Assembly: GCF_032444005.1 (NCBI RefSeq) | Contig: NC_091285.1 | Coordinates: 268,956,001-269,020,000, forward strand | DNA from: Ranitomeya imitator | Lineage: Eukaryota | DNA length: 64,000 nt | Reading direction: 5' to 3' | Shown: piece by piece, positions 2,769 to 43,744 of the stretch | Layout of the letters: each line of letters starts with the position of its first letter | How positions within the stretch are numbered: the first letter of the stretch is position 1 | Position numbers and translations under genes: made by a program | Notes under the pieces: generated by a model | Told to the model about the DNA's origin: nothing | Database searches by the model: none | The model's input: the letters and a program-made list of their open reading frames with translations, nothing else

Positions 2769-2836
2769 TATTTATAACTCATGGCCACATCCACAAAGTA
2801 TTTCCTTCTTTGTCGATATACGTTGTCTTTAAATCC
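2769..2836 (-). CDS. tph2: tph2 exon 5 equivalent, 68 bp
   Basis: ctttaaag|GGATTTAAAGAC...TATAAATA|gtaagt. Translates [22 protein letters not shown](Y). Too short for the ORF track; found by reading. Confidence 0.96.
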
Positions 2837-17817: not shown

Positions 17818-18075
<258 letters not shown>

Positions 18076-19989: not shown

Positions 19990-20699
19990 CAATACAGCAA
20001 AACCCAGACTCATATTAAGATAGTGTGCCAAAAGTGATGCAATTGATTACATATTACTCCAAAAATATTGTATCTCAAAAAGGACAAATGGAGTTTTCAA
20101 AACAAAATTATGTACAAAAATCTTTATTGACACAATAATAAACATACAAAAAGACAGATAAACCATGTGCTATAAAGGACACCACAAAAAGTGGTTGCGT
20201 TTAGTACAAAGTATAGCTCCGCCTTGAGGAAGCAGAGTTAACGGACAGTGAAACGCACATCGGGGTTTGGGTGCTGGCGTTTTAGTACCGAGTAAGATGA
20301 TTTTCTGACTGTGTATCATACAAATGAATTTGGGAAACCTTTGATGATTGTAATGTCAGATTGGTTTTAGACCTTGGGCTCTTGACCACAGACCATGCAA
20401 CCCTGGGCATTAGTATAGACATAGGAATAGTATAATGACTGATGGCACTTTTTGCTTACAGCAGGGGGCATTGTAAAGTGACTCTTTGAGCTCAACCAGC
20501 AAGTCCTCTTCTTACCATTACTAAGTTTGCTGCTGTGAATTGAGCTATATTTTGTACTAAATGCCACCACTTTTTGTGGTGTCCTTTATAGCACATGGTT
20601 TTATCTGTCTTTTTGTATGTTCATTATTGTGTCAATAAAGATTTTTGCATATAGTTTTTTTTTTTTTTTAAAACTCCATTTGTCCTCCTTTTTGAGATT
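19990..20699. mobile_element. Penelope-like fragment with inverted pseudo-LTR arms
   Basis: About 150-bp inverted repeat (20070-20219 vs 20532-20698), flanking duplication CATATGAA(A)GCC, hammerhead-like relic at 20219-20265. Confidence 0.55.
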
Positions 20700-22015: not shown

Positions 22016-22591
22016 TTGGGGTTCATATCAGCTGTGAATTGTCCAAAAACACAGCTGACATCAAGCCCTGGTGCTAGTAATAGAGAGGTGTCTATCAAGC
22101 AATGTTCCTACTCTTCACAGACACCTGATCTTGCTGAGCGTACCTTGAGCCGTGAGTGGCTGCCGCTAAAGCCTATGGAGCCTAAGAAGGAGGCTCCATA
22201 AGCTTTGGATGACGGATTCGGGAAAATTCGTGGGAAGCCCTGGACTACAATGGACCTGTGTGGTAACTTTTTCATAAAATAAATTAGTGAATGAGGGACA
22301 GTATCTCTTTTTATTTATTTATTTTTATGTGTTTCAGATTTCTATTTGTGGACTACATTGGATTCCCTGGACTACGTTGGACCTGCACGAGACCTCTTTT
22401 TTATATATAAATTGGTTAACCAGAGAAAGAGTTGGGAAGTGTTTTTTTAACTAAAGTATTTTTACTTGCGTGTTCTTTCTTCTTTGTCCTGGGTTAGTAA
22501 TGGGGTGACTGATAGACACCTCTCCATTACTAAAACTAGGGCTTGATTCCAGCTGTGTTTTTGGACAATTCACAGCTGACATCAACCCCAA
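22016..22591. repeat. 82-bp inverted repeat within a non-autonomous DNA element remnant
   Basis: 22016-22097 (ttggggttcatatcagctgtgaattgtcc...) is the reverse complement of 22510-22591 with few mismatches. Confidence 0.65.
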
Positions 22592-22877
22592 TTACCATAA
22601 TCCAAATTGAAACCTGATTGAAATGATAGGTCACTTTCTGATGCCAGATTCCCTTTAAAATCAGCAGGTCAATTTGCAAAAAAAAAACTGAGGGGAAAAA
22701 ACGGATAGAAAAGTATTGTGTCTGTTGACCCTAAATGTCAGTTTGTCCTTCTACTAATGGTTAAAGTAGCATAACACCTAAATATGTCTAAAAAACAATT
22801 ACTAATGACCCCGCTATAAATGAATTCTTAAAACCTTATCATACTGAAACATGTGATTACATAAGCAGAGGCCTTGC

Positions 22878-23061
22878 CTTCATCTTCTCGCCATTTTATT
22901 TCTGCAGGGTTCAAGGAGATAACATTTGGCTGAAGCTTTAACAGATGAATTAATTCCTGGGCTTTTTTCTTCGTACATTCAAATTCTGCGTAGACCTCTG
23001 CCTCAGAGCTGCCATTTTTGGACTTTCTTGATTCTATGTGAATAATGTTCACATATTTTTC
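22878..23061 (-). CDS. tph2: tph2 exon 3 equivalent (ACT domain), 184 bp, GC donor
   Basis: ttcctcag|GAAAAATAT...GATGAAG|gcaagg. Translates EKYVNIIHIESRKSKNGSSEAEVYAEFECTKKKAQELIHLLKLQPNVISLNPAEIKWREDE. The HIESRKS motif and 184-bp size match TPH2 exon 3. Confidence 0.92.
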
Positions 23062-24043
23062 CTGAGGAAACAAATATAAAAGGCAGAGCATTTGAGAACA
23101 AATAACCACCCCTGTTGTTTTATTAGAAATGCCATTTCCCGCAGAATATAAATAATTGCCATGATGAACACTGCAAGCATAAAGCTGGAACTTTGTTCTT
23201 TCATGGACCTTGTGTTGTATGAACTGGTTTGCATATGTCCTGGCACAAATCTACTAAATGCTAATTTTGTCCCGTTTCACCTATCCAGCTGTTTTGCAAA
23301 ACTTGGCATAAATCCAATAGCGCTCTACCAGCTGCTGATTCTTCCTGCTCTACCCCTTCTTTCTTTTATTATTTGTGATAGCAGAGAGGGAAGGGATTCA
23401 GGGTGTACAAAGAAGATCAACATTAGAAAAAAAGGAAAGCATTTAAGTTATTATGGAGGACAGATCATTCCAGCTACAGATAGGATATGATCTTTCGTAA
23501 ACTGTAAAACATGAAAATCACTCGAGAAGTGAAGTCCTATTGACACATGGGAACTAGGAAGATGGCACCACATGCAAAAAAGTTTAAAATTAGGATTAGG
23601 TTACAAATTACATATGAGGGGACCAAAACCAAATGAAGAAAAGAATGCTGATTGAAGCCTGGTCCCTAGAGTTCAGTGACACTGCTATTTTGCATTTACA
23701 TGTCCTATTTCTTTAACCTCTTGCCTTCACAGTCGATTTCCATTTTTGTTTGTATTTTTTGCTTCCCTTCTTCCAAAAGTCACACCTACGATATTTTTGT
23801 CAACATGAGTGGTATGAGGGCTTGTGTTTTTTGCAAGATGAGTTATAGTTTTGAATAATGCCATCCATTCGACCATACAATCTACTGAAAGAAAGGAAAA
23901 AATCCAAATGGAGTGAAATGGTGCAAATATGTATGGTAAAATTGCCAATAATTCTCCAGGTCAGTATGATTCGGTCCAACTGTGATCCAGCAAAAGATCG
24001 GATTGCACTCAGACTTATGTTATTTTATGGAGCCGTGTACATA

Positions 24044-25649
24044 CAGTGGGGCAAAAAAGTATTTAGTCAGTCAGCAATAGTGCAAGTTCCACCACTTAAA
24101 AAGATGAGAGGCGTCTATAATTTACATCATAGGTAGACCTCAACTATGGGAGACAAACTGAGAAAAAAAAATCCAGAAAATCACATTGTCTGTTTTTTTA
24201 ACATTTTATTTGCATATTATGGTGGAAAATAAGTATTTGGTCAGAAACAAACAATCAAGATTTCTGGCTCTCACAGACCTGTAACTTCTTCTTTAAGAGT
24301 CTCCTCTTTCCTCCACTCATTACCTGTAGTAATGGCACCTGTTTAAACTTGTTATCAGTATAAAAAGACACCTGTGCACACCCTCAAACAGTCTGACTCC
24401 AAACTCCACTATGGTGAAGACCAAAGAGCTGTCAAAGGACACCAGAAACAAAATTGTAGCCCTGCACCAGGCTGGGAAGACTGAATCTGCAATAGCCAAC
24501 CAGCTTGGAGTGAAGAAATCAACAGTGGGAGCAATAATTGGAAAATGGAAGACATACAAGACCACTGATAATCTCCCTCGATCTGGGGCTCCACGCAAAA
24601 TCCCACCCCGTGGGGTCAGAATGATCACAAGAACGGTGAGCAAAAATCCCAGAACCACGCGGGGGGACCTAGTGAATGAACTGCAGAGAGCTGGGACCAA
24701 TGTAACAAGGCCTACCATAAGTAACACACTACGCCACCATGGACTCAGATCCTGCAGTGCCAGATGTGTCGCACTGCTTAAGCCAGTACATGTCCGGGCC
24801 CGTCTGAAGTTTGCTAGAGAGCATTTGGATGATCCAGAGGAGTTTTGGGAGAATGTCCTATGGTCTGATGAAACCAAACTGGAACTGTTTGGTAGAAACA
24901 CAACTTGTCGTGTTTGGAGGAAAAAGAATACTGAGTTGCATCCATCAAACACCATACCTACTGTAAAGAATGGTGGTGGAAACATCATGCTTTGGGGCTG
25001 TTTCTCTGCAAAGGGGCCAGGACGACTGATCCGGGTACATGAAAGAATGAATGGGGCCATGTATCGTGAGATTTTGAGTGCAAACCTCCTTCCATCAGCA
25101 AGGGCATTGAAGATGAAACGTGGCTGGGTCTTTCAACATGACAATGATCCAAAGCACACCGCCAGGGCAATGAAGGAGTGGCTTCGTAAGAAGCATTTCA
25201 AGGTCCTAGAGTGGCCTAGCCAGTCTCCAGATCTCAACCCTATAGAAAACCTTTGGAGGGAGTTGAAAGTCCGTGTTGCCAAGCGAAAAGCCAAAAACAT
25301 CACTGCTCTAGAGGAGATCTGCATGGAGGAATGGGCCAACATACCAACAACAGTGTGTGGCAACCTTGTGAAGACTTACAGAAAACGTTTGACCTCTGTC
25401 ATTGCCAACAAAGGATATATCACAAAGTATTGAGATGACATTTTGTTTCTGACCAAATACTTATTTTCCACCATAATATGCAAATAAAATGTTAAAAAAA
25501 ACAGACAATGTGATTTTCAGGATTTTTTTTCTCAGTTTGTCTCCCATAGTTGAGGTCTACCTATGATGTAAATTACAGACGCCTCTCATCTTTTTAAGTG
25601 GTGGAACTTGCACTATTGCTGACTGACTAAATACTTTTTTGCCCCACTG
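24044..25649 (+). mobile_element. Full-length Tc1 element, family A
   Basis: TA|CAGTGGGGCAAAAAAGTATT ... CCCCACTG|TA with inverted repeats of about 200 bp. Confidence 0.97.
24411..25433 (+). CDS. Intact DD34E Tc1 transposase, 340 aa
   Basis: Paired-like [22 protein letters not shown]; 34 residues counted between the second D and E. Confidence 0.95.
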
Positions 25650-26203
25650 TATCTGATTTTTTCTTCAGACAAAGCCGATTGAAGGAAAAATCACATCATG
25701 CCTGCGTTTGAGTTGATATTCAGATCGCTCTCAGACATGTACAGTAAGTCAATGAGTCCGTGGATAACATCAGACAGCACCCAAATGACATCTGTGTGCA
25801 GTCAGTTTTTCACAGACTGACAGAATGGAGAAGATGGAAACAAAATTCTCCATTTTCTCCTCATCCAAGAGAATAGAATCTCTAGGAGCACACTATGATG
25901 AGACTCTGATCAAACTCTAATCAGAGTGTGATTAGCATAAAGAGACGGATTCTCTTTTTTTCTTTTTTTTAAATAGTGAAAAAAAATTCTGAAGTTTGTA
26001 AAAAAAAAAATTTGTGTTTTTGTCGCTATTTTTTGAGATCCATGATCTTTTTATTTATTTATTCATGTCGCTGTTTGAGAGCTTCTTTTTATGTATGGTG
26101 AGATGACAGTTTTGATACCATGTTAAGGTACAATTACTAGTGTGGATCTTCTGATGCACTAGATGAGACTAGCAGTTAAAACTGTCCTCGCATTCAGAAC
26201 ATA

Positions 26204-26450
26204 CACTGCTCAGAAAAATAAAGGGAACACTTAAACAACAGAATATAACTCCAAGTAAATCAAACTTCTGTGAAATCAAACTGTCCACTTAGGAAGCAAC
26301 ACTGTTTGACAATCAATTTCACATGCTGTTGTGCAATTGGAATAGACAACAGATGGAAATTATTGGCAATTATCAAGACATACTCAATAAAGGAGTGGTT
26401 CTGCAGGTGGGGACCACAGACCACATCTAAGTACCAATACTTTCTGGCTC
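26204..26450 (+). mobile_element. Left end fragment of another Tc1 family
   Basis: TA|CACTGCTCAGAAAAATAAAGGGAACAC. Confidence 0.55.
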
Positions 26451-26790
26451 ATGGATAAGAAAAAGATAGAGACCGCGCATAAGGGGAAAACACTAGGAAA
26501 AAAGGAGGGAATGTGTAAAACCACAGTATATAGAGTCACACAGTGGACCCAAAAAATCACCTGAATCGCTGTGAGTCCCCCTAGTCAGGAAAACAGCAAC
26601 CCAAAAAGAGCCCAGTTAAAGTACTGACGCCACGGTGGAAACACATAGACAGCAGTGCGCCGGACTCAAATGAAACCAGCAAGGCCCCCAACCATATACT
26701 AAAACAGTACCTGTAACTCCTGCAAGTTATTAGATGTGCCGAGCAGTGTGGCTGTATGATGGATCAGGGTGAGGCGCCGCTGTGGCACCC

Positions 26791-29498
26791 CTGTGTCATC
26801 TACAGCCCCCCAGAACTAGCCATCTCCACCTTTCTTGACCACTTCACCACCTGGCTACTTCATTTCCTCTCAGCCGACATCCCCACTATCATCATGGGTG
26901 ACTTCAATATCCCCATTGACACCTCCATCTCAGCCTCCTCCAAGCTTTTATTGCTCACTGTCTCCTTTGGTCTCACTCAATGGTCATCTGCAGCCACCCA
27001 TAAAGATAGCCACACATTGGACCTCATTTTCACCCACCTCTGTTCCCTTACTAATCTCACTAACTCACCCCTCCCCCTGTCTGACCACAACCTACTGACA
27101 TTTTCTTCCCTCTCCCCTCTTAGTGCGCAACCTCCACTCCACAAACTCACTCACCCTTGCAGAAACCTCAAACACCTCAATTTACACTCACTGTCTGAGT
27201 CCCTTCTCCCTCTTACAGACATAGCTTCCTTCCATGACAGATGCTGCTGTCACTTTTTATAACGCAACAATAACAGCAACACTCGATTTGACCTCCCGGC
27301 TCATGCACAGCAAAACTCGTAGAATCAACAGGCAGCCCTGGCTAACCAGCCTGAACAAAGAACTGAGACAGACTTCCAGGGTCGCTGAATGGAGATGGAA
27401 GAGATCACGTTCTGCTGAGCGCTTCACTGCATACAAGGAGTCCCTCGCCAGCTTCAAGTCCATGCTCAGTGCCACAAAACAAAGTTACTTCTCATCTCTC
27501 ATATCCTCCCTGACTCACAACCCTAAACAACTCTTCAACACTTTCAATTATCTACTCCGTCCCCCATCATCTCCTCCCTCCCCTCTTATTTCTGCTGAAG
27601 AATTTGCCTCTTTCTTTAAGCAGAAGATCGACAACATCAGACAAAGCTTTGACCCGCAGCCCCCACTGCCCCTCCTCTTGACTTCTGAGCCCTGTTCAAA
27701 AACCAGCTTCTCCAACATAACAGATGATCAGCTCAACATCCTTCTGTCAAGATCACATCTCACCACTTGCACGCTTGACCCGCTCCCATCCCACCTCATC
27801 CCTAGCCTCGCAAAAGTCTTCATCCCAACCCTAACACAACTCTTCAACCTCTCACAAACGGTGTCTTCCCCTCATCCTTCAAACACGCATCAATCACACC
27901 TATCCTCAAAAAACCCTCCATCGACCCATCCTCTGTGTCCAACTATCGCCCGATATCCCTTATCCCTTATGCCTCAAAACTACTGGAACAGCATGTCCAT
28001 CTTGAACTGTCCTCCCATCTCTCCTCCTGCTCCCTCTTTGACCGGTTACAATCTGGCTTCCAACCACATCACTCAACTGAAACTGCCCTAACTAAAGTGA
28101 CCAATGACCTACTAACCGCCAAGAGCATGCGACACTACTCTGTATTCCTCGTCCTGAACCTGTCTTCTGCCTTCGGTACTGTGGACCACTCCCTCCTGTT
28201 ACAGATTCTCTCATCTCTTGGCATCACAGACTTGGCCCTATCCTGGATCTCATCATATCTAACAGACCGGACATTGAGTGTTTCCCTCTCCCACACCACC
28301 TCCTCATCTCGCCCCCTGGCTGTCGGTGTTTCCCAAGGCTCAGTTCTAGGACCCCTACTCTTCTCCATCTACACCTTCGGCCTGGGACAGCTCATAGAAT
28401 CCCACGGTTTACAATATACAATATCATCTCTACGCTGATAACACGCAGATCTACCTATCTGGACCCGACCTCACTTCCTTACTGACCAAAATCCCATAAT
28501 GTCTGTCTGCTATTTCAGCCTTCTTTTCTGCTTGTTTTCTAAACTGAACATGGACAAAACAGAATTCATCATCTTTCCCCTACCTCACTCTACCCCTCCA
28601 CCTGACCTATTTATCAATGTCAATGGCTGCTCACTTTCCCCGGTCCCACACGCTCGGTGCCTCAGGGTGATCCTTGACTCTACCCTCTCTTTCAAGCCAC
28701 ATATCTAAGCCCTTGCCTCCTCTTTCCGATTCCAACTCAAATACATTTCCTGGATCCGTGCATTCCTTGACCATGAAACCACAAAAACACTAGTACATGC
28801 CCTTATCATCTCCCGCCTTGACTACTGCAACCTCCTACTCTCTGGCCTCCCCTCTAGCACTCTGGCACCACTCCAATCCATCTTAAACTCTGCTGCCCAA
28901 CTAATCCACCTGTCTCCCCGTTACTCCCCAGCCTCTCCTCTCTGCCAGGCCCTTCACTGGCTTCCTATTGCCCAGAGGCTACAGTTCAAAATACTAACAA
29001 TGACATGCAAAGCCATTCACAACCTGACTCCTCCATACATCTGTGACATGGTCTCCCGGTACCTACCTACACGCAACCTTTGATCGTCTCATGATCTCCT
29101 TCTCTTCTCCTCTCTCATCTCTTCCTTCCACAACCGCATCAAAGACTTCTCCCGTGCTTCCCTTATACCCTGGAACTCTCTACCCCAACACATCAGTCTC
29201 TCGCCTACCACGGAAACCTTCAAAAAGAACCTGAAGACCCACCTCTTCCGACAAGCCTACAACCAGAAGTGATTCCCAGTCTACTGAACCGCTGCATGAC
29301 CAGCTCTACCCTCTCCTAGTGTATCTTCACCCATCCCCTGTAGACTGTGAGCCCTCGCGGGCAGGGTCCTCTCTCCTCCTGTACTTGTGTGTGCCTTGTT
29401 TTTCTCATATTTATTGTACTTGTCTATATTTGCCCCATTCACATGTAAAGCGCCATGGAATAAATGGCGCTATAAAAATGTATAATAATAATAATAAT
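26791..29498 (+). mobile_element. 5'-truncated L2-clade LINE, frameshifted
   Basis: APE motif IMGDFNI; RT motifs NYRPISL, QSGFQPHHSTETAL, GVSQGSVLGPLLF, YADN; 3' stem-loop gcgccat-ggaataa-atggcgc and (AAT)n tail. Confidence 0.9.
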
Positions 29499-29646
29499 CC
29501 AGACCTCCATGGGATATTCATTTCGATTTACATTGATTATTTTTATGTTTTATTCTTCTCAACACATTCCACTATGTGATGAATAAAGATTTGCAACTGA
29601 AATATTTCATTCAGTGATATCAAGGATATGGTATTTTAGAGTTCCT

Positions 29647-29908
29647 TTATTTTTTTGAGCAGTGTATATATACCTGATCCCCAACGTGAGATGTAGAGTG
29701 TGTGATCATGTAAGGAGGACTGGGAAAATATTCTCCATGTTTAGAGGGTGAAAATAGCCCAATGGAATTCTGGAATGCCGAATCGACATTCGGATTGGAA
29801 AGGTGATCATCTTGCATGTTGTCTTCGTTTTCAGAATCCGGGCTGATAGCTGTAGGAATTTCTTCCTCTTTACAATGCTGATCTGCCTTCAAGTACAGAT
29901 CTTCCTTG
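29647..29908 (-). pseudogene. 3' part of an anuran zinc-finger-gene retrocopy
   Basis: KEDLYLKADQHCKEEEIPTAISPD...ITHSTSHVGDQVYIHCS resembles the spacer of frog oocyte/gastrula zinc-finger proteins (DQQCKEEEIPTDIS ... THST.H). Confidence 0.65.
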
Positions 29909-30036
29909 NNNNNNNNNNNNNNNNNNNNNNNNNNNNNNNNNNNNNNNNNNNNNNNNNNNNNNNNNNNNNNNNNNNNNNNNNNNNNNNNNNNNNNNNNNNN
30001 NNNNNNNNNNNNNNNNNNNNNNNNNNNNNNNNNNNN
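29909..30036. other. Assembly gap (128 N)
   Basis: Run of n; probably hides the Helitron 5' end. Confidence 0.99.
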
Positions 30037-31657
30037 GCTACAGCCACAAAATTTTGCACAGTCACACGTCTGGACCCCGAGAGCGTCATAGGCTATGTTG
30101 TATATACCGTACAGTTGCTAAGGTGGGGCCCATCATGGGATATTCACCACACACGGGGATATGAGCACACACACAAAATGCGACACAAACTACCACGTAC
30201 GTGCTTGAACACATATACCACCCTCAGCACACATTTCACCACACATACACCAACCTCGCCACATAAAAGTCAAAACTCAAAAGTCGCCACTCAAAACTCG
30301 TCACGCGTAATATTCGCCACATGCAAAACTAGGCTCACGCAAAACTAGACTAACAGGGCATCTTTATGGCTTTCCACTGTCTTGAGAGTTTATGAGGCAT
30401 GGGATCCTTCTTGAGTTCGCTGTATCTGCGGTATGAATGGTAATGTATTTTTGTTGGTGCATGACTGGCTTCATGGTAACCTTAGGAGGAATTTTTTTCA
30501 GGGGTTGTGTAACGGATTTTTTTTTTTTATTCTTCCAAATCGGCATTTAACCCATTATTGGTATGCTGTATATGATATATTTTCCCTGTTTAATAATTAA
30601 TAATTTACGGTTATAAATCCCTCTCCAATATTTGGTGCCAATCATCAACTATACTGCAATTGCTGCTGGAAAAATATATTTGAATTTTTCTATTACTCTG
30701 TACTCAACCTTTGGTACCCCATGGTCCTTTATATATATATTTTTCAGAATATTTGGTATTATGTAGCTAAATGATGTACAGATTTGGTTATAATCACACT
30801 GAGCGGCGTTAATGTTTTTTAATTGTTTTTATACGTCCATGTTGTAGGTTTTGGTGTGCAATTAAAATATTTTGTTACTTTGTTATAAGGTGATCCCTGC
30901 TTTTGTGTTAGTCTTCTTGTTCTTGGATTAGTGCAAAACTAGGCTCACGCAAATCTCGCCACACGTGCAAAACTCACTTCATGGATAACTCGCCACATGC
31001 AAAACTTGAACACGCAGAAAAATTGCCACATGCCCAAAAGTTGCAACACATGCAAAAGTTGCTTCACACAACACTTACACATACTCAAAACACACCACAC
31101 ATAAAACTCACCACACGCAAAACTTGCTGCACACAACTTGCTACACTAACCTGTCACATGCAACTCGACACATAAAAAGTTGCTACACGCATGTTGCCAC
31201 ACAAAACTCATCTCACAAAAGTCGCTACATGCATGTCACCACACGCAACTCAACACACACAACTTGACACTTGAAACTCACCCTAAAACACACACAAGTC
31301 TGGTATTATCCTTCAAAAATAAAAATCTGAATAATAAGCAGACAAACTACAAGAGCATCAAATGTACCATATAGGAAATACGGCAGCTGTCAGTCACATG
31401 ATCTGTATGATATGTATGTTTGAGCTAATATATACTGCCAGGGGGGAGGGCTTCCTGTTGGCTGGGGATTTATCAGGCTGCCAATAGCAACCAAACACAG
31501 CTCAGCTTCTATTTTGCTGCAGTTAATTAATCTGAGCTCTGATTGGTTAATATAGGCAACAAAGGAAATTCTCAGTATAACAAAGCTTGTGTGAGGTAAT
31601 AGCATGTCAGTTAGGGTGTGTTGGTGGAAAGGCTGATGTCAGTCACATTACCTCTAT

Positions 31658-34626: not shown

Positions 34627-34864
34627 GTAGTAGAAGATTACTTCACATTACTTGGCCAATTTAGTTAAATCTGTGTGGAATATCTCTGGTGTTGAAATAT
34701 ATGTTGTGAAATGCTTCTATTAGCTTAGTTTTTGCCTTTTAATAATTACATTTCTATCTATTTGTTTTGTGGTTTTTGTGTGCAGAATAAATTTTTGTTA
34801 ACACATTCTATTTTGCTAAGAGCAGTTATTAGCCCGGGCGAAGCCGCGTAGTACAGCTAGTATA

Positions 34865-35330
34865 CTATGCAACTGCAACTTTTACGTCGGCCAGATCAGA
34901 AGTCTGGGATTCTTCTGTAACCACTTTGGTATCTTCAGTACAACCATTTGGATAAAGAGAACTGTGACATTTCAATGGTAAGTTTCTGCAGCCATCTACA
35001 GACTTCAGCGTATAACACTTTTCCACCTTTTTCTCCTTATAGAAATCTATTTGGTTTTCTGAACAATCTTCTCCTGTCAGCAGCTCAAGGATCTTGTTGG
35101 TGAGGTCCAGGATCTTCTGCACATTGTTTTTCTCACGTATCAGTGACTGATGAGATGTGGTAATATCTTTTTTCTTAGGCACATAGTTCTCTCCCCTTCC
35201 ATACTGAAGCCTCAGAAAAAGGACCGTGTTTGTGATGCACGGAGTGAGTATGATGACAGCTTCCTGACTTCCCCAGCTCAGGGTCCAGGCCTGCACAGCT
35301 CCAGCTCTCCATTCTCACAGATGTGACAAA
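34865..35330 (-). pseudogene. 5' part of an anuran zinc-finger-gene retrocopy (KRAB/FAX-like N-terminus)
   Basis: GENYVPKKK...HQSLIREKNNVQKILDLTNKILELLTGE...DFYKE...VDG..LPLKCHSSLYPNGCTED...SQTSDLADVKV. Contiguous across positions where this family usually has introns. Confidence 0.7.
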
Positions 35331-35581
35331 GCCTCAGCACCCTTGTGAAGGTACATACAACATTTGAACATATTTTATTGCATTTTTTTTAGCAAGATGT
35401 GATGAAGGAAAAACTACAATTCTGGCATTTTAAAAAAAAATTTCACTTTACCGAATTTACCACATAGTTTAATACATTTTATATTTTGATAAAATTGACT
35501 TTTGAGACTGTAATAATATTAAATGGATTCAGTTTTAAATGTATTTATTTTTCATGGGGGAAATAGAGGCAATTTGAACTT

Positions 35582-35585
<4 letters not shown>

Positions 35586-35633
<48 letters not shown>
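35586..35633. repeat. (TA)n microsatellite
   Basis: About 23 TA units. Confidence 0.95.
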
Positions 35634-35636
<3 letters not shown>

Positions 35637-35770
35637 CAAAAAAGTGAGAGCAACACAGAAAAGAAAAACAAAAATCAGGGTGCAAGGCCTCTCAGGCATG
35701 TACCAAACCTTGTCATAGAAGTCCAAAAATCTGCTTTGCTGCCTCTGATTTTTGGACTTATATATATATA

Positions 35771-37505
35771 CTAGATGGTGGCCCGATTCTAACGCATTGG
35801 GTATTCTAGAATATGCATGTCCACGTAGTATATTGCACAGGCCACGTAGTATATTGCCCAGCCACGTAGTATATTGCCCAGTCACGTAGTATATTGCACA
35901 GCCCACGTAGTATATTGCCCAGCCACGTAGTATATTGCCCAGCCACGTAGTATATTGCCCAGTCACGCAGTATATTGCCCAGCCACGTAGTATATTGCAC
36001 AGCCCACGAAGTATATTGCCCAGCCACAAAATATATTGCCCAACTACATAATATATATTGCACAGTCACGTAGTATATTGCCCAGCCACGTAGTATATTG
36101 CCCAGCCACATAGTATATTGCACAGCCCACGTAGTATATTGCCCAGCCACGTAGTATATTGCCCAACCACATAGTATATTGCCCAGTGACGTAGTATATT
36201 GCAGTCACGTAGTATATTGCCCAGCCACGTAGTATATTGCCCAGCCATGTAGTATATTGCCCAGCGACGTAGTATATTGCCCAGTGACGTAGTATATTGC
36301 CCAGTCATGTAGTATATTGCCCAGCCACGAAGTATATTGCCCAGTGATGTAGTATATTGCTCAGGCACGTATATTGCCCAGGCACGTAGTATATTGGCCA
36401 GTGACGCAGTATATTGCCCAGTGACGTAGTATATTGCCCAGTCACGTAGTATATTGCACAGTCACGTAGTATATTGCCCAGTGACGTAGTATACAGCACA
36501 GAGCCACGTAGTATATTGCACAGCGACCTAGTATACAGCACAGAGCCACGTAGTATATTGCCCAGCCATGTAGTATATTGCCCAGCTACGTAGTATATTG
36601 CCCAGCCACGTAGTATATTGCCCAGTCATGTAGTATATTGCTCAGCCACATAGTATATTGCCCAGCTACGTAGTATATTGTCCAGCCACGTACTGTATGT
36701 CACAGGTTAAAAAATAAAAAATAAACATATACTCACCTTCCGAGGGCCCCTTGTAGTTCGGTCACATGACCATGACGTCATGGAAGGTCCTTCTCGCACA
36801 GGCGTGCAGGACCTGTGATGACGTTGCGGTCACATGACTGCGACATCATCACAGGCCCTGCGCGCCTGCGTGAGAAGGAGCTGCCATGATGTCACGGTCA
36901 TGTGACCGCGATGTCATCACAGGCCCTGCGCGCCTGCGTCATGGCAGGTCCTTCTCGCGCAGGCGCGCAGGGCCTGTGATGATGTCGCGGTCACATGACT
37001 GTGACGTCATGGCAGGTCCTTCTCCCATGCTATCCTTGGCACCGAAACCTGCCGCTTGCATGGAGCGGTCACCGGAGCATCGCAAAAGGTGAGTATATAA
37101 TGATTTTTTTTTTTTTTTAAATCATTTTTAACATTAGATGTTTTTACTATTGACGCTGCATAGACAGCATCAATAGTAAAAACTTGGTCACACAGGGTTA
37201 ATAGCGGCGGTAATGGAGTGAGTTACCCGTGGCATAACGCGGTCCGTTACCGCTGGCATTAACCCTGTGTGAGCGGTGACTGCGGGGAGTATGGAGCGGG
37301 CACCGGGCGCTGACTGCAGGGGAGGGACTAGTCGGACTGGGGCAATCGCTGATTGGTCGCGACAGCCATGACAGGCAGCTGGCGAGACCAATCAGCGACT
37401 TGGATTCCATGACAGACAGAGGCCGTGACCAATGAATATCCGTGACAGACAGACAGACAGAAGGACAGAAAGACGGAAGTGACCCTTAGACAATTATATA
37501 GTAGA
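35771..37505 (-). mobile_element. Non-autonomous Helitron
   Basis: Minus strand A|TCTACTATATAATTGTC ... CCCAATGCGTTAGAATCGGG-ccaccat-CTAG|T. Confidence 0.88.
35821..36690. repeat. 20-bp minisatellite (CCACGTAGTATATTGCCCAG), about 40 copies
   Basis: Period of 20 read directly, with 21-22 bp variants. Confidence 0.95.
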
Positions 37506-38309
37506 TATATTTGTATATATATACATATATATATATATATTTTTTTTTTTTTTTGTAAAAACTTGTTTTACTTTAATTTTTATCCCGCCTAGCAAACTGA
37601 ACCTTGGACATTTGATCACTTGGATTTCGAACATAGATATCTTTGGCAATCCAATACATTCTTATAAAAAAAGAGTTAAAATTAAGTGACATGTACAATT
37701 TGTACATTTTCTACAACTGAGATTTTATCTTTTTGCTAAGAAGTAAAATCTGTTCAAAATGTTCACAAAATTCTGCAATAGATTTAATTTAAAAAAAAAC
37801 TAAACGTTAGTTAAAACCATAAAGTCGACATTAAGATGTAATTGGGCTTCGTGAATCGAAGACACTGAAGAGAAGGGTCATATTGAGGTGATTTGTTTAA
37901 TTAGACAGGTAAAAATGTAGCTCATTTAACATTTTGGGCCATATTCATCTATACACCTGCTCTACTGGAAAAGTGCAGAGCTATCAATCTACTAAATGAC
38001 AAGCCACAGGCAACAGGACTATTGGAACCTATCAGAAATTCAGGCTTCACATGCATAGAAATAGAGACATGGAGGATTATTCAATACTTCCCAAAACTAT
38101 ATTTAACTGTCAAATTAATAACTGTACTGCCTGAATCACTAAGAGAAGATCCCTTCACATCGGGGCATTAGAGTCATAAATTTATGACCATAGATAATCA
38201 TTGAAACGGATAACCAAACACTAATTGTATCCTGAAAAGTGTCAACCAGGATAGTGAGAAGTAATGAGTGCCCCAAACATAGGTCATACAACCTCCACAA
38301 ACACATATA

Positions 38310-39961
38310 CAGTTAGGGCCAGAAATATTTGGACAGTGACACAATTTTCGCGAGTTGGGCTCTGCATGCCACCACATTGGATTTGAAATGAAACCTCTAC
38401 AACAGAATTCAAGTGCAGATTGTAACGTTTAATTTGAAGGGTTGAACAAAAATATCTGATAGAAAATGTAGGAATTGTACACATTTCTTTACAAACACTC
38501 CACATTTTAGGAGGTCAAAAGTAATTGGACAAATAAACATAACCCAAACAAAATATTTTTATTTTCAATATTTTGTTGCAAATCCTTTGGAGGCAATCAC
38601 TGCCTTAAGTCTGGAACCCATGGACATCACCAAACGCTGGGTTTCCTCCTTCTTAATGCTTTGCCAGGCCTTTACAGCCGCAGCCTTCAGGTCTTGCTTG
38701 TTTGTGGGTCTTTCCGTCTTAAGTCTGGATTTGAGCAAGTGAAATGCATGCTCAATTGGGTTTAGATCTGGAGATTGACTTGGCCATTGCAGAATGTTCC
38801 ACTTTTTGGCACTCATGAACTCCTGGGTAGCTTTGGATGTATGCTTGGGGTCATTGTCCATCTGTACTATGAAGCGCCGTCCAATCAACTTTGCAGCATT
38901 TGGCTGAATCTGGGCTGAAAGTATATCCCGGTACACTTCAGAATTCATCCGGCTACTCTTGTCTGCTCTTATGTCATCAATAAACACAAGTGACCCAGTG
39001 CCATTGAAAGCCATGCATGCCCATGCCATCACGTTGCCTCCACCATGTTTTACAGAGGATGTGGTGTGCCTTGGATCATGTGCCGTTCCCTTTCTTCTCC
39101 AAACTTTTTTCTTCCCATCATTCTGGTACAGGTTGATCTTTGTCTCATCTGTCCATAGAATACTTTTCCAGAACTGAGCTGGCTTCTTGAGGTGTTTTTC
39201 TGCAAATTTAACTCTGGCCTGTCTATTTTTGGTATTGATGAATGGTTTGCATCTAGATGTGAACCCTTTGTATTTACTGTCATGGAGTCTTCTCTTTACT
39301 GTTGACTTAGAGACAGATACACCTACTTCACTGAGAGTGTTCTGGACTTCAGTTGATGTTGTGAACGGGTTCTTCTTCACCAAATTATGTATGCGGTGAT
39401 CATCCACCACTGTTGTCATCCGTGGACGCCCAGGCCTTTTTGAGTTCCCAAGCTCACCAGTCAATTCCTTTTTTCTCAGAATATACCCAACTGTTGATTT
39501 TGCTACTCCAAGCATGTCTGCTATCTCTCTGATGGATTTTTTCTTTTTTTTCAGCCTCAGGATGTTCTGCTTCACCTCAATTGAGAGTTCCTTTGACCGC
39601 ATGTTGTCTGCTCACAGCAACAGTTTCCAAATGCAAAACCACACACCTGGAATCCACCCCTGACCTTTTAACTACTTCATTGATTACAGGTTAACGAGGG
39701 AGACGCCTTCAGAGTTAATTGCAGCCCTTAGAGTCCATTGTCCAATTACTTTTGGTCCCTTGAAAAAGAGGATGCTATGCATTACAGAGCTATGATTCCT
39801 AAACCCTTTCTCCGATTTGGATGTGGAAACTATCATATTGCAGCTGGGAGTGTGCACTTTCAGCCCATATTATATATATAATTGTATTTCTGAACATGTT
39901 TTTGTAAACAGCTAAAATAACAAAACTTGTGTCACTGTCCAAATATTTCTGGCCCTAACTG
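38310..39961 (-). mobile_element. Full-length Tc1 element, family B
   Basis: TA|CAGTTAGGGCCAGAAATATTTGGACAGTGACAC at both ends. Confidence 0.97.
38565..39602 (-). CDS. Intact DD34E Tc1 transposase, 345 aa
   Basis: [19 protein letters not shown]; 34-residue spacing counted. Confidence 0.95.
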   Translation of the reverse strand: MRSKELSIEVKQNILRLKKKKKSIREIADMLGVAKSTVGYILRKKELTGELGNSKRPGRPRMTTVVDDHRIHNLVKKNPFTTSTEVQNTLSEVGVSVSKSTVKRRLHDSKYKGFTSRCKPFINTKNRQARVKFAEKHLKKPAQFWKSILWTDETKINLYQNDGKKKVWRRKGTAHDPRHTTSSVKHGGGNVMAWACMAFNGTGSLVFIDDIRADKSSRMNSEVYRDILSAQIQPNAAKLIGRRFIVQMDNDPKHTSKATQEFMSAKKWNILQWPSQSPDLNPIEHAFHLLKSRLKTERPTNKQDLKAAAVKAWQSIKKEETQRLVMSMGSRLKAVIASKGFATKY

Positions 39962-40132
39962 TATCTTTGTTTCTATGTTTTTTGTCTTACAACAAGCAAT
40001 TGTCATATGACTCAGCATCCTTACATTTAATATTGAATGCCAGGTATCATTTTGGCCAACTGCTGCCCCAGTCCACTGTTAATAAGATCTCTTTAAATTC
40101 AAAATGTGCTGTTCCAGGAATAGATTCCTTAA

Positions 40133-41177
40133 CCTCTTAACGACCAGAGGTATTTTTGGTTTAGTATTTACATTTTTTGCTCCCCTTCTTCCCAGAGCCA
40201 TAACTTTTTTTTATTTTTGGGTCAAAATGGCCATGTGAGGGCTTGTTTTTTGCTGGACAAGTTGTAATTTTGAAAGACACCATTGATTTTACCATATCGT
40301 GCACTTGAAAATGGGAAAAAAAATTCCAAGTGCGTTGAAACGACAAAAAAAAGTGCAATTCCACAATTGTTTTTTGCTTGGCTTTTTTACTACGTTCACT
40401 AAATGCTAAAACTGACCTGCCATTATGATTCTCCAGATCATTATGAGTTCATAGACACCAAACATGTCTAGGTTCTGTTTTATCTAAGTGGTGAAAAAAA
40501 ATTCATATGTTTGTTAAAAAAAAATTGTGCCACTTTCCAATACCCATAGCGTCTCAATTTTCCATGATCTCGGGTTGGGTGAAGGCTTATGTTTTGCATG
40601 CTGAGTTGGTATTTTTAAAGATACCATTTTGGTGCAGATATGTTCTTTTGATCGCCTGTTATTGCATTTTAATGCAATGATGTGGCGACCAAAAAACGTA
40701 ATTCTGGCATTTTGACTTTTTTCTTGTTACGCCGTTTAGCGATCAGGTTAATCCTTCTTTTTCTATTGATAGATTGGGCGATTCTGAACACAGCAATACC
40801 AAATATGTGTATGTTTGATTTTTTTAATTGTTTTATTTTGAATGGGGTGATTTTAGCTTTTATATATTTTTTTAAAAACTTTGTTTTTACCTATGGAATG
40901 CATCAATAATCTTCATGGGAGACTAGAAGCTGCCATGACTCGATCGGCTCTGCTACATACAGGCAATGATCCGATCGCCTGTATGCAGCAGAGTTGCATA
41001 CTTGCTATGAGCGCCGACCACTGGGTGGCGCTCATAGCAATCCAGCAGTGACAACCATAGAGGTCATGCCAACCCATCGGCGACCCGTGGTCATGTGACA
41101 CTTGTGCCAATGGGCGTGATTTCGGATGCGCTTGCCGGAAGCACTTGGTAAATGCCGTTGTAAGAGTTTGACAGCGA
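40133..41177. mobile_element. piggyBac-like non-autonomous element, right end truncated
   Basis: TTAA|CCTCTTAACGACC; body similar to 7256-8081. Confidence 0.6.
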
Positions 41178-41331
41178 ATATATTGTTACCTTAGCAATTT
41201 TGCTTTATTGCACTAATTAATCTAAAATCAAAAATGAAGAAGCACTTTTGCAAGTAAAGTTGATTAAAACTATCTATTTTATGTCTACAGGTGCTATGCA
41301 TAACTATGCATCTCCATGGTAACAGACTTAA

Positions 41332-41923
41332 AGGGAACCTGTCACCACTTTCCTGTCCTACCAGCTAAAAATATCATTTTATTCAGTGTCAGCTATGCAT
41401 TCCCTAAATACTTATGTAACCCCCATGTATCACCCATAAAAACCTTTTATATTTCTCCTGCGATATATGCTAATAAGGTCTGTCCAGTCCCATGGGCGTG
41501 GCTTCGGTTCACTCACTCCACCCCTCTCCTCGGCTGCTGCACACAGTCCTTGACATGGATGATGCAGATCGCTGTGAGATATCGCGCCTGTGCAGTCAAA
41601 TGGTTTCTCGAGTGTGGGCAGTATGCTTTGCCCAACTGTGGGCAAAGCCGAAAAGCAGAAGTGCGCACACGCAAGAAACCATTTGACTGCGCAGGCGCGA
41701 TATCCTGCAGCGATCTGCCTCATACACGTCAAGGACTGCGTGCAGCAGCTGAGGAGAGGGGTGGAGTGAGTGAACTGAAGCCAAACCCATTGGACAGGAA
41801 GGACCCTATTAGCATATACATGGGCAGTCAGGGGGTTACACAAGTATTTAGGGAATGCATAGCTGACACTGAATAAAATGATATTTTTAGCTGGTAGGAC
41901 AGAAAAGTGGTGACAGGTTCCCT
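41332..41923. mobile_element. Palindromic T2/Kolobok-like MITE
   Basis: TTAA|AGGGAACCTGTCACC ... GGTGACAGGTTCCCT|TTAA, fold-back over almost the whole length. Confidence 0.9.
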
Positions 41924-42727
41924 TTAAAACACACGCTGAGTTCTATGAACCTGTAGGCACACTCCGTCCCTTCCGCCCTTAAATTCACTGCAACATACTA
42001 TAAATTGCCTGCATAATAAGTTAGCATGGAAAGATATTTTTTAATTAGGGAAATGTTCACACATTCAGTATTTGGTTATTTGGTCAGTCTTTGATATCAG
42101 GAGTGGCTGAAAAATGCAGAAGTGGTGCACATGTTTCTGAGAAACACCTGAAAGATTAACAAACTCCCTGGTGGTTTTTGAGTACTATGAGGGGTGTTTT
42201 TTTAATGAAATTACAGTAGGAATCAATCAAAAAGTAAAAAAATCCCAAAAGGTATAAACTGGGCTATAAACAGGGGTACATGCAGCGTGTAAGCGCACGT
42301 TCACACTTGCCACTGAGCAGAAAAAAACAAAGATAGAAACATAATGATTAAATACCCTGCAGTAAATAAATAAACAGCACAGTGCATAAAAATAATATAC
42401 AGTACTTACTTAACATGTTTTCTGAGAAACAAAAATGCGAAAGCCATCCTGCCAGTTCACGGTGACCATAATTGGGACGTCCTAACGCTAATATTAAAAA
42501 CCTTACAGTTTGTCAAGTGACATGCATGTGGATAAGGGCTGAGAAGGACTGGGCCCAACTAGTGGACACACAGCCATTTCTGTCTTTCTTTTTTTAACTA
42601 AATTGGCCCTTAAAAAAACTTTTGTAATTTTTTTAATCACGGGAGAAATATAAAAGGTTTTTTATGGGTGATACATGGGGAGTCAGGGAGTTACATAAGT
42701 ATTTAGGGAATGCATAGCTGACACTGA

Positions 42728-43240
42728 AAAAGCGATAGAGCGAAACGCGCGTCAGGGGTGTTGGGAAGGCCACACACGTACCTTGATTCACCATGGGTAA
42801 GTTCAGCGTGTCTCTTGGATATATGTAACATTGGGACATTATGGCAAATTACAGGCTTTCTGAGATGTCTCCTCATTGTAGGAGCATGGACCATTAGTTA
42901 TATGCTTGAGACTTACCCAGATCATACTATGGTTGTGTGCCCTATCTCCTAGTGTACTGGTTGGTTTCTCCTTCTCTCCACATGTTGGAATTTTTTTATG
43001 TATTTTTCTATTATATTATGATGAGTTGTGTATGGTATTGTCTGTATTTATATATCAATAAAATGTCTATATTCTTTTTTACAAGTTTTTAGTGTCTATG
43101 CTCCCTTTTTCGCTAGTGTAGTATATATCCCATTGGGAGTGATGCTCTTATACAATTAGATTCATATTGGGAGAGCTGTTCCTAATACCTATTATGCTCT
43201 CGGCCATTTATAACACATGCTTATTGATTTTCGTATGTAT
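42728..43240 (+). mobile_element. Penelope-like fragment
   Basis: 14-bp flanking duplication ATAGCTGACACTGA; begins with a GCGAAACGCGCGTC hammerhead-like relic. Confidence 0.55.
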
Positions 43241-43603
43241 ATAGCTGACACTGAGTAAAATGATATTTTTAACTGGTAGGACAGAAAAGTGGTGACAGGT
43301 TCCCTTTAAGTCTGTTACCATGGAGATGCATAGTTATGCATAGCACCTGAAGACATAAAATAGATAGTTTTAATCAACTTTACTTGCAAAAGTGCTTCTT
43401 CAGTTTTAATTTTAGATTAATTAGTGCAATAAAGCAAAATTGCTAAGGTAACAATATATTCGACTATGAAATAAAACTAAGACAACAATAGAAAATTAAA
43501 CCCTTTTTTTAGCTATGTACCAAACTAAAATAGTTTAGCAGTAATCTCAATTTAATAATAATTGCTAATTGTGAGCAGTGAGAGGAAAAAAATGGAAACC
43601 CAC

Positions 43604-43744
43604 CTTAAAGATTTTTAAACTTTGTAGTAATCCTCCAACTTCATTTTTCAACGTGAGGACAACCGCTGTTTTTTCTATTTCAGCAGTTGGTTCGGTTTCG
43701 CTACATTTGTTCTCATCAATTTTCACAGCATTCAATTTGTCACG
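43604..43744 (-). CDS. tph2: tph2 coding exon (equivalent of TPH2 exon 2), 141 bp, phase 0-0
   Basis: ttttttccag|CGTGAC...TTTAAG|gtgggt. Translates RDKLNAVKIDENKCSETEPTAEIEKTAVVLTLKNEVGGLLQSLKIFK. KTAVV.LKNEVGGL is the start of the TPH2-type ACT domain. Confidence 0.9.

What the first reader, a model, noticed from the sequence alone, without database searches (positions are those of the whole stretch)
22878..43744. TPH2 with a remodelled regulatory (ACT) domain but a near-invariant start of the catalytic domain
Against human TPH2 as I recall it, exon 3 matches 32/61 residues and the ACT part of exon 2 matches 15/23. Exon 4 from VPW matches 30/30 and exon 5 matches 21/22. The RKSRRRSS stretch, which holds the PKA site Ser104 in human TPH2, reads RKSKNGSS here, so the R-R-x-S motif is gone. 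Splice sites, exon sizes and frame are intact, so the gene looks functional. Inference: this is either a lineage-accelerated tph2 or a neofunctionalised paralog with altered phospho/allosteric control. That would matter in frogs, whose skin makes serotonin-derived indolealkylamines.
Basis: partly seen in the sequence, partly recalled or inferred. Interest (0 to 1): 0.72.

Follow-up and report, generated by a model that had tools for sequence, protein, structure and literature searches.

The report
Frog TPH2 with clade-wide ACT divergence
These are exons 2-5 of the normal, already annotated brain serotonin-synthesis gene TPH2 of a poison frog; its regulatory domain really is very unlike ours, but all frogs share that change, so it dates from their common ancestor and is not special to this genome.

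Summary
Minus-strand exons 2-5 of TPH2 lie at 43744-43604, 23061-22878, 17951/17948-17851 and 2836-2769. The R-R-x-S motif before Ser104 is absent.

The N gap (29909-30036) lies in intron 2 and can hide no canonical coding residue.

The four exon peptides are 100% identical to RefSeq TPH2 of Ranitomeya imitator (484 aa, intact, one locus, about 743 kb).

The "remodelled" ACT sequence is not particular to this genome.

There was nevertheless a real acceleration on the anuran stem:
- 18 of 85 ACT positions are fixed-shifted, against 3 of 295 catalytic positions.
- The ACT stem branch is 0.38 substitutions/site, 9.8 times the catalytic one.
- The Ranitomeya terminal branch is only 0.02.

Frog TPH1 and the Ser19 site are unchanged. 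The domain is now constrained (exon 3 dN/dS 0.10) and is predicted to keep the ACT fold.

Verdict: an ordinary, known orthologue, not a paralogue. The clade-wide ACT remodelling is of modest interest, and I found no description of it in the searchable literature.

The parts
43604..43744 (-). TPH2 exon 2 (141 nt, phase 0/0). It encodes 47 aa: a variable linker plus ACT strand beta1 and helix alpha1.
   Evidence: Splice sites read. tblastn of frog TPH2 residues 34-80. 47/47 identical to R. imitator RefSeq TPH2. 15/23 to human in the ACT part.
23062..43603 (-). Intron 2 (20.5 kb). It is filled with transposons and holds the assembly gap at 29909-30036.
   Evidence: The exon 2 and exon 3 residues are contiguous in all frog TPH2 proteins, so no canonical coding sequence can lie in the gap.
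22878..23061 (-). TPH2 exon 3 (184 nt, phase 0 to 1). It encodes 61 aa: ACT beta2, the loop with Ser103/Ser104, beta3, alpha2, beta4 and the start of the linker.
   Evidence: 32/61 to human TPH2 86-146. 61/61 to R. imitator TPH2. dN/dS 0.10 against a ranoid-like frog. A 506-nt contig of run X10 lies on 22878-23063 only.
22876..22877 (-). GC (not GT) donor of intron 3.
   Evidence: The same G|GCAAG is present in frog contig L001. Genomic ORFs P0004, P0007, P0009 and P0002, which carry amniote-type TPH2 exon 3 sequence, read ..E-G-K-A.. through the same junction, which implies a GC donor there too.
17851..17951 (-). TPH2 exon 4 (101 nt from the proximal CAG acceptor, 98 nt from the distal TAG at 17948, which RefSeq uses). 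It encodes the linker and the start of the catalytic domain.
   Evidence: 30/30 to human from VPW. P0179 reads ..E-D-E-E-L-G-V-P-W, which fits the distal acceptor.
2769..2836 (-). TPH2 exon 5 (68 nt, phase 0 to 2).
   Evidence: 21/22 to human. 22/22 to R. imitator TPH2.

Best explanation
The window holds exons 2-5 of the single, intact, already annotated TPH2 orthologue of Ranitomeya imitator or a very near relative. TPH2 is the neuronal tryptophan 5-hydroxylase that limits serotonin synthesis. Its N-terminal regulatory ACT domain differs strongly from the human one because of an episodic burst of substitutions on the stem lineage of frogs (Anura). That burst replaced about a fifth of the ACT positions and removed the R-R-x-S context of Ser104. 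The catalytic domain, the Ser19 phospho-site peptide and the paralogue TPH1 stayed untouched. After the burst the new ACT sequence came under ordinary purifying selection, and it is predicted to keep the beta-alpha-beta-beta-alpha-beta ACT fold. Five of the eight human L-Phe pocket residues are identical here and three are conservatively changed. Shown: orthology, the clade-wide distribution, the rate pattern, present constraint and predicted fold. Inferred: frog TPH2 is still regulated through Ser19 and 14-3-3 and through ACT dimerisation and ligand binding; Ser104 is probably no longer a PKA target; and the M91I, V106A and I108V changes may alter ligand affinity. Whether the burst was adaptive or compensatory core repacking is not decided.
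For: Per-exon identity to XP_069620694.1 (P0179, R. imitator) is 47/47, 61/61, 33/33 and 22/22. That protein is encoded at one place, with a gene range of about 743 kb on a 726-Mb chromosome of GCA_032444005.1. It has Biopterin_H at 582.9 bits. Window exon 3 is 54-58/61 identical to hyloids, 49-52 to ranoids and pelobatoids, 40-48 to pipoids (Rhinophrynus and pipids) and to Bombina and Discoglossus, but 26-34/61 to every non-anuran TPH2 from shark to human. Across 19 anurans and 16 non-anurans, 18/85 ACT positions are fixed-shifted (11 with disjoint residue sets) against 3/295 catalytic positions, Fisher p = 3e-10, and none in exon 1. Fixed-topology LG+G4 branch lengths give stem Anura ACT 0.382 against CAT 0.039 (ratio 9.8; whole tree 2.4; crown Anura 2.2) and a Ranitomeya terminal ACT branch of 0.023. 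Tajima relative-rate tests for frog against caecilian, axolotl or bird give p from 0.02 to 2e-5 in ACT and are not significant in CAT for Ranitomeya and Xenopus. Frog TPH1 ACT is 79-85% identical to bird TPH1 and keeps K-R-R-N-S. Exon 3 between the window and frog contig L001 gives dN 0.086, dS 0.85 and omega 0.10. The AF2 model of P0179:52-146 has pLDDT 82, and its best PDB match is the human TPH2 regulatory domain 7QRI, TM 0.70. Pocket residues are taken from bioRxiv 10.1101/2022.09.20.508773: L70, N72, L77, I94 and S96 are identical here, and M91I, V106A and I108V are changed.
Against: Exon 1 and exons 6-11 are not in the window, so intactness rests on the identical public protein, not on this DNA. 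Transcription evidence is thin. One low-depth contig of a sister species (X10) behaves as spliced at both exon 3 borders. Runs X3-X5, which hold about 0.8 of the exon 3 words, laid nothing on the exons, possibly because of the tool's filter. No leiopelmatid frog was in the set, so 'all Anura' means Costata and everything above it. The stem-branch dN/dS was not computed. The functional consequences for phosphorylation and L-Phe binding are inference only. Discoglossus also shows an excess of catalytic-domain changes, so rate heterogeneity among frogs is not confined to ACT in every lineage.
Confidence: 0.9

Rival explanations
1. A lineage-specific (dendrobatid or species-level) acceleration of tph2.
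For: Only the large distance to human. There is also one lineage-specific detail: a one-residue shorter linker (484 against 485 aa).
Against: The Ranitomeya terminal ACT branch is 0.023 substitutions/site against 0.382 on the anuran stem. Exon 3 is 58/61 identical to Engystomops, 57 to Rhinoderma and 56 to Bufo. All 18 shifted positions are shared with Bombina, Discoglossus and pipids.
Confidence: 0.02
2. A neofunctionalised TPH2 paralogue beside a canonical copy.
For: None found. The copy number of the whole genome was not scanned directly.
Against: The exact protein is encoded at one place in the public assembly. Every anuran species examined has this type and none has an amniote-like TPH2 ACT. 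A 2019 survey found one tph2 per tetrapod except the tetraploid X. laevis (PMC6470480). The divergence runs away from TPH1 as well: 44% ACT identity to the frog's own TPH1, against 68% between bird TPH2 and TPH1. So no exon was borrowed from a paralogue.
Confidence: 0.03
3. The frog ACT domain is a decaying regulatory domain under relaxed constraint, with loss of allosteric and phospho-control.
For: Pfam's ACT model no longer detects it, while bird TPH2 scores 25.8 bits and frog TPH1 28.2 bits. The R-R-x-S motif is lost. Three pocket residues are changed.
Against: Exon 3 omega is 0.10 between neobatrachian frogs. The crown-Anura ACT/CAT rate ratio of 2.2 equals the vertebrate-wide 2.4. 18 shifted positions stay fixed across 19 species that include the deepest anuran splits sampled. 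The AF2 model is confident and matches 7QRI. Ser104 itself is invariant in frogs.
Confidence: 0.05

Closest known systems
RefSeq XP_069620694.1, tryptophan 5-hydroxylase 2 [Ranitomeya imitator] (P0179)
   Same: Identical over all 163 residues encoded by exons 2-5 of the window. Same exon junctions when exon 4 starts at the distal TAG acceptor.
   Different: Nothing in sequence. My first reading, with the proximal CAG acceptor, would add one Val.
Human TPH2 (PDB 7WIY full length; 7QRI regulatory domain with L-Phe; 4V06 catalytic domain)
   Same: Same exon boundaries, including the GC donor of intron 3. Same predicted ACT fold (TM 0.70). The catalytic start is identical (30/30, 21/22). Ser103/Ser104 are kept, and so are L70, N72, L77, I94 and S96 of the L-Phe pocket. 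The Ser19 peptide is kept in the frog full-length protein.
   Different: About 45% of ACT residues differ. Arg100-102 is replaced by Lys-Asn-Gly. Pocket changes are M91I, V106A and I108V. Lys79 is Gln, as already noted for amphibians in PMC6470480.
Other anuran TPH2 (Xenopus, Bombina, Discoglossus, Pelobates, Rana, Bufo, Leptodactylus and others)
   Same: They share the 18 clade-specific ACT substitutions and lack Arg102.
   Different: Ordinary within-clade variation (40-58/61 in exon 3). Bombina keeps an Arg at position 101.
Frog TPH1 (for example P0115, R. imitator)
   Same: Same domain layout, and a catalytic domain 81% identical.
   Different: TPH1 keeps the canonical vertebrate ACT sequence and the K-R-R-N-S site. 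ACT identity to the frog's own TPH2 is only 44%.
Phenylalanine hydroxylase regulatory domain (PDB 5FII)
   Same: An ACT dimer with an L-Phe site at the interface. The frog model matches it at TM about 0.6-0.7.
   Different: A distant paralogue: exon 3 phmmer E = 0.6.

Membership tests
TPH2 (vertebrate tryptophan 5-hydroxylase 2) | Orthology to TPH2 rather than TPH1, PAH or TH. | tested here: met
   Each exon scores higher to TPH2 than to TPH1. 100% identical to annotated R. imitator TPH2. Closest to 18 other anuran TPH2 proteins.
TPH2 (vertebrate tryptophan 5-hydroxylase 2) | Biopterin-dependent hydroxylase catalytic domain. | tested here: inconclusive
   The window holds only its first 55 or so residues (exons 4-5), which are 51/52 identical to human. 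The identical public protein P0179 has PF00351 at 582.9 bits over 146-475. Exons 6-11 are not in the window.
TPH2 (vertebrate tryptophan 5-hydroxylase 2) | N-terminal extension with the Ser19 phospho-site (14-3-3 binding). | tested here: inconclusive
   Exon 1 is not in the window. In P0179 and all 19 frogs the peptide around Ser19 is unchanged.
TPH2 (vertebrate tryptophan 5-hydroxylase 2) | R-R-x-S PKA consensus at Ser104 (Ser58 in TPH1). | tested here: not met
   The window reads K-N-G-S-S. Ser104 is present but there is no Arg at -2 or -3. All 19 frogs lack Arg102. Most of the non-anuran TPH2 sampled (13 of 16) and all TPH1 sampled keep R-R-x-S. This is a regulatory detail, not a criterion of family membership.
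ACT domain (regulatory domain of aromatic amino acid hydroxylases) | beta-alpha-beta-beta-alpha-beta fold. | tested here: met
   The AF2 model of P0179:52-146 has pLDDT 82, with elements E-H-E-E-H-E. By Foldseek the best hit is 7QRI (TM 0.70), followed by many ACT domains.
ACT domain (regulatory domain of aromatic amino acid hydroxylases) | Sequence match to Pfam ACT (PF01842) or TH_ACT (PF21417). | tested here: not met
   P0179 has no PF01842 hit at E <= 1, and TH_ACT scores 12.8 bits (cut-off 27). Bird TPH2 scores 25.8 and frog TPH1 28.2 for PF01842.
ACT domain (regulatory domain of aromatic amino acid hydroxylases) | L-Phe pocket at the dimer interface (human L70, N72, L77, M91, I94, S96, V106, I108). 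| tested here: inconclusive
   Five of eight residues are identical and three are conservatively changed (M91I, V106A, I108V). Binding cannot be tested with these tools.

The most novel reading that the evidence does not exclude
The ancestor of frogs re-engineered the control of brain serotonin synthesis. A burst of about 18 fixed changes in the TPH2 ACT domain abolished the PKA site context at Ser104 and altered three residues lining the L-Phe pocket, while Ser19 and the catalytic domain were left alone. Under this reading anuran TPH2 responds differently to kinases and to amino-acid ligands than TPH2 of every other vertebrate group. This would be a clade-wide regulatory variant that, as far as the searchable literature shows, has not been described beyond a note on Lys79Gln.
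Probability: 0.3. Interest if true: 0.5.

Novelty: already known. Interest (0 to 1): 0.27.

Why it matters
For the scan, this locus is an ordinary, annotated orthologue and needs no further attention as a candidate paralogue. For people who study aromatic amino acid hydroxylases, frogs, including the laboratory species Xenopus, offer a natural TPH2 variant. Its regulatory domain was rebuilt once and then frozen: the secondary PKA site context is gone and three L-Phe pocket residues are changed, while Ser19 and the catalytic core are unchanged. That makes the frog enzyme, or a frog/human ACT swap, a convenient way to separate the roles of Ser104, of the ACT ligand site and of Ser19 in TPH2 regulation. 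It also warns against carrying mammalian TPH2 regulation over to Xenopus serotonin work.

Tried and rejected
1. The word-based protein search with the genomic ORF around exon 3 found only one fragment, P0001. Full-length frog proteins were reached only through a bird TPH2 query and then Mixophyes TPH2.
2. Exon 1 was sought by tblastn with three frog TPH2 proteins. It is not in the window, so Ser19 could be read only in the identical public protein.
3. Read laying on 17700-23200 was swamped by transposon-derived contigs. Only one contig (X10) lay on exon 3 and none on exon 4, so usage of the cagTAG acceptor and expression in organism A stay unshown. The tool warns that conserved-gene contigs may be filtered out silently.
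4. Pfam on single exon peptides gave nothing useful.
5. Literature searches for an accelerated frog TPH2 regulatory domain and for Ser104 found no paper on either topic. PMC6470480 only notes variation near the first helix and K79Q in amphibians.
6. DNA of the full R. imitator gene could not be fetched because its range is about 743 kb. So there was no codon-level analysis beyond exon 3 and no synteny check (TBC1D15/TRHDE).
7. Considered and rejected: exon conversion from TPH1, PAH or TH (the frog ACT is further from all of them), and a hidden exon in the N gap (residues are contiguous).
8. All searches used single exons by reference, and full-length work used the stored public protein P0179.
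Full report
WHAT IS IN THE WINDOW. The gene lies on the minus strand. Read directly from the sequence, the exons are:
- Exon 2: 43744-43604, 141 nt, AG acceptor and GT donor, phase 0 at both ends.
- Exon 3: 23061-22878, 184 nt, AG acceptor. The donor is GC, not GT (G|GCAAGG).
- Exon 4: ends at 17851 (GTAAGT donor) and starts behind a tandem cagTAG acceptor, at 17951 or 17948.
- Exon 5: 2836-2769, 68 nt, AG acceptor and GTAAGT donor.

The finding's coordinates (22878-43744) run from the last base of exon 3 to the first base of exon 2. tblastn with three full-length frog TPH2 proteins finds residues 34-198 only.

THE ASSEMBLY GAP. The N run at 29909-30036 sits inside intron 2 (23062-43603), among transposon sequence and low-complexity repeats. 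In every frog TPH2 protein the last residue of exon 2 (80) is followed directly by the first residue of exon 3 (81). No canonical coding residue can therefore be hidden in the gap, and reading frame across it is not an issue.

- Exon 3 against human TPH2 residues 86-146 (7wiy_B): 32/61.
- ACT part of exon 2: 15/23.
- Exon 4 from VPW: 30/30.
- Exon 5: 21/22.

Human residues 97-104, R-K-S-R-R-R-S-S, read R-K-S-K-N-G-S-S here. Ser103 and Ser104 remain and the arginines at -2 and -3 are gone. All four exons score higher to TPH2 than to TPH1.

WHOSE GENE IT IS. A library-wide phmmer with exon 3 gave one 84%-identical frog fragment (P0001), with everything else at about 52%. Through a bird TPH2 and then Mixophyes TPH2 I reached the anuran proteins and their cluster members. 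The window's four exon peptides are 47/47, 61/61, 33/33 and 22/22 identical to RefSeq XP_069620694.1, "tryptophan 5-hydroxylase 2 [Ranitomeya imitator]" (P0179). That protein is 484 aa and full length, with Biopterin_H at 582.9 bits. It is encoded at a single place, with a gene range of about 743 kb on a 726-Mb chromosome of GCA_032444005.1. The window is therefore R. imitator or a very near relative, and the gene is already annotated and intact. The RefSeq model uses the distal TAG of the tandem acceptor (exon 4 from 17948). The proximal CAG would add one Val, as some other frog models have.

IS THE ACT SEQUENCE PECULIAR TO THIS GENOME? No. Identity of window exon 3 to other TPH2 proteins:

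| Compared with | Identity (of 61) |
|---|---|
| Engystomops | 58 |
| Rhinoderma | 57 |
| Bufo | 56 |
| Leptodactylus | 55 |
| Mixophyes, E. coqui | 54 |
| Ranoids, Pelobates, Pelodytes | 49-52 |
| Xenopus, Rhinophrynus, Bombina, Discoglossus | 44-48 |
| Hymenochirus | 40 |
| Every non-anuran TPH2 (caecilians, axolotl, lungfish, coelacanth, birds, crocodilians, turtles, mammals, Polypterus, teleosts, shark) | 26-34 |

In an alignment of 19 anuran and 16 non-anuran TPH2 proteins:
- 18 of 85 ACT positions are shifted between the two groups, 11 of them with disjoint residue sets.
- In human numbering they include F68L, S69T, V78L, K79Q, M/L91I, R102G/S/N, F109Y, D111E, C112F, E118K, F119 variable, N120Q and Q124H.
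- In the catalytic domain only 3 of 295 positions are shifted (Fisher p = 3e-10).
- In exon 1 none is shifted.

All 19 frogs lack Arg102 and all keep Ser104.

THERE WAS NEVERTHELESS A REAL ACCELERATION, ON THE ANURAN STEM. Branch lengths were fitted with LG+G4 on a fixed species topology (a smaller taxon set gave the same picture):

| Branch or tree part | ACT (subs/site) | Catalytic (subs/site) | Ratio |
|---|---|---|---|
| Stem Anura | 0.382 | 0.039 | 9.8 |
| Whole tree | - | - | 2.4 |
| Crown Anura | - | - | 2.2 |
| Stem Gymnophiona | 0.088 | 0.019 | 4.7 |
| Stem Amniota | 0.035 | 0.016 | 2.2 |
| Ranitomeya terminal branch | 0.023 | 0.017 | - |

Tajima relative-rate tests in ACT give 22 against 3 unique changes for Ranitomeya against a caecilian (p = 1e-4), 28 against 4 against a bird (p = 2e-5) and 20 against 8 against the axolotl (p = 0.02). 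The same tests on the catalytic domain are not significant for Ranitomeya or Xenopus.

The paralogue serves as a control. Frog TPH1 ACT is 79-85% identical to bird TPH1, the same as bird against ray (78%), and it keeps K-R-R-N-S. Frog TPH2 ACT is 55-58% identical to bird TPH2, whereas caecilian and axolotl are 76% and 73%. The frog TPH2 ACT is also further from its own TPH1 (44%) than bird TPH2 is from bird TPH1 (68%). The change is therefore divergence away from all paralogues, not an exon borrowed from one.

PRESENT STATE OF THE DOMAIN.
- Between the window and a ranoid-like frog contig (L001), exon 3 has dN 0.086, dS 0.85 and omega 0.10. Together with the ordinary crown ACT/catalytic ratio, this shows purifying selection on the new sequence.
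- An AlphaFold2 model of P0179:52-146, which is identical to the window's exon 2-3 product over the part those exons encode, has mean pLDDT 82 and the beta-alpha-beta-beta-alpha-beta order. Its best solved-structure match is the human TPH2 regulatory domain dimer with L-Phe, 7QRI (TM 0.70, 54% identity), followed by many ACT domains.
- Pfam's ACT model no longer detects the frog TPH2 domain. Bird TPH2 scores 25.8 bits and frog TPH1 28.2 bits.
- The structural paper on 7QRI (bioRxiv 10.1101/2022.09.20.508773) names eight L-Phe pocket residues. L70, N72, L77, I94 and S96 are unchanged here. M91 is Ile in all frogs. V106 is Ala in neobatrachians. I108 is Val here.
- The Ser19 peptide is unchanged in all frogs. 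A paper I read calls Ser19 one of the most important TPH phospho-sites and links phosphorylation to 14-3-3 binding (PMC6470480).

MECHANISM, WITH THE STATUS OF EACH STEP.
- Shown: this is the TPH2 orthologue; the ACT fold and most pocket residues are retained; the domain is constrained; the R-R-x-S context of Ser104 is lost clade-wide; Ser19 is kept.
- Inferred: frog TPH2 still works as a tetrameric biopterin- and iron-dependent hydroxylase. It is regulated through its N-terminal tail (Ser19 and 14-3-3) and an ACT dimer. Ser104 is probably no longer a PKA target. The two smaller side chains, V106A and I108V, may change ligand affinity or preference.
- Not decided: whether the stem burst was adaptive or compensatory core repacking. 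The pairing of F68L with C112F and a variable F119 would suit repacking.

TRANSCRIPTION.
- The run search with exon 3 plus 37 flanking bases found runs of "organism A" holding 0.71-0.81 of the words, where the exon makes up 0.83 of the stretch. Related organisms B, C and D held 0.33-0.71.
- Laying four runs on 17700-23200 was dominated by transposon contigs.
- One contig of run X10 (organism B; 506 nt, depth 2) lies on 22878-23063 with two differences. It starts exactly at the exon 3 donor, and its remaining 320 letters leave the genome at the acceptor, as a spliced transcript would.
- Nothing was laid on exon 4. Runs X3-X5 laid nothing on the exons, and the tool warns that conserved-gene contigs may be filtered out. 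Expression is therefore supported only weakly here.

STEPS LEFT OUT. Every search used single exons by reference, and full-length analyses used stored public proteins, above all the identical P0179. The N gap was neither filled nor looked up.

VERDICT. This is an ordinary, single-copy, already annotated TPH2. The explanation is clade divergence that arose in one burst in the frog ancestor, not a feature of this lineage and not a paralogue. In the searchable literature I found this anuran-wide remodelling of the regulatory domain mentioned only in passing (K79Q and variation near the first helix, PMC6470480; negative searches). It is of modest interest for work on TPH2 regulation and for Xenopus serotonin biology.

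Noticed in passing
window 22876-22877 (- strand); L001:736-737: Intron 3 of TPH2 has a GC-AG donor (G|GCAAG). The same donor is in a distant frog contig. It is also implied in genomic ORFs P0004, P0007, P0009 and P0002, which carry amniote-type TPH2 exon 3 sequence and read through the junction as ..E-G-K-A.. So it appears to be an old conserved non-canonical donor.
   Followed up: partly
window 17948-17954 (- strand): Exon 4 has a tandem cagTAG (NAGNAG) acceptor. RefSeq for R. imitator uses the distal AG (no Val). Models for Leptodactylus, Rhinophrynus, Gastrophryne, Hyperolius and Hymenochirus carry one extra residue there. Actual usage could not be read from the runs.
   Followed up: partly
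window 17936-17948 (- strand): The Ranitomeya linker is one residue shorter than in all other frogs: E-L-G-V-P-W against E-L-D-G-V-P-W, 484 against 485 aa. This is the only lineage-specific oddity seen in this stretch.
   Followed up: no
window about 10034-15332 (+ strand), inside TPH2 intron 4: A young Ty3/Gypsy LTR retrotransposon. The direct repeats are 99% identical (10034-10333 and 15033-15332, and probably extend further). It has an open 958-aa gag-RT-RNaseH ORF (10873-13749) and a 431-aa integrase-chromodomain ORF (13746-15041).
   Followed up: partly
window 24411-25433 (+), 38565-39602 (-), 33388-34311 (+), 48560-49438 (+): Four Tc1/mariner (Sleeping Beauty-like) copies. Two have full-length open transposase ORFs (340 and 345 aa; HTH_SB, HTH_Tnp_Tc3_2 and DDE_3).
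   Followed up: partly
window 55723-59292 (- strand): A hAT-type element. The 796-aa ORF has a BED zinc finger and the adjacent 382-aa ORF has the hAT dimerisation domain. It lies in the G+C-richer stretch at 54-58 kb, upstream of exon 2.
   Followed up: partly
window 32165-33175 (+) and 31704-32082: A Pif1-helicase 2B-domain ORF, possibly a Helitron remnant, sits next to a 69-bp tandem repeat of 5.5 copies (87% matches).
   Followed up: no
public annotation of P0179: The annotated R. imitator TPH2 gene spans about 743 kb for a 484-aa protein. In the window alone, introns 2, 3 and 4 are 20.5, 4.9 and 15.0 kb, and intron 1 exceeds 20 kb.
   Followed up: no
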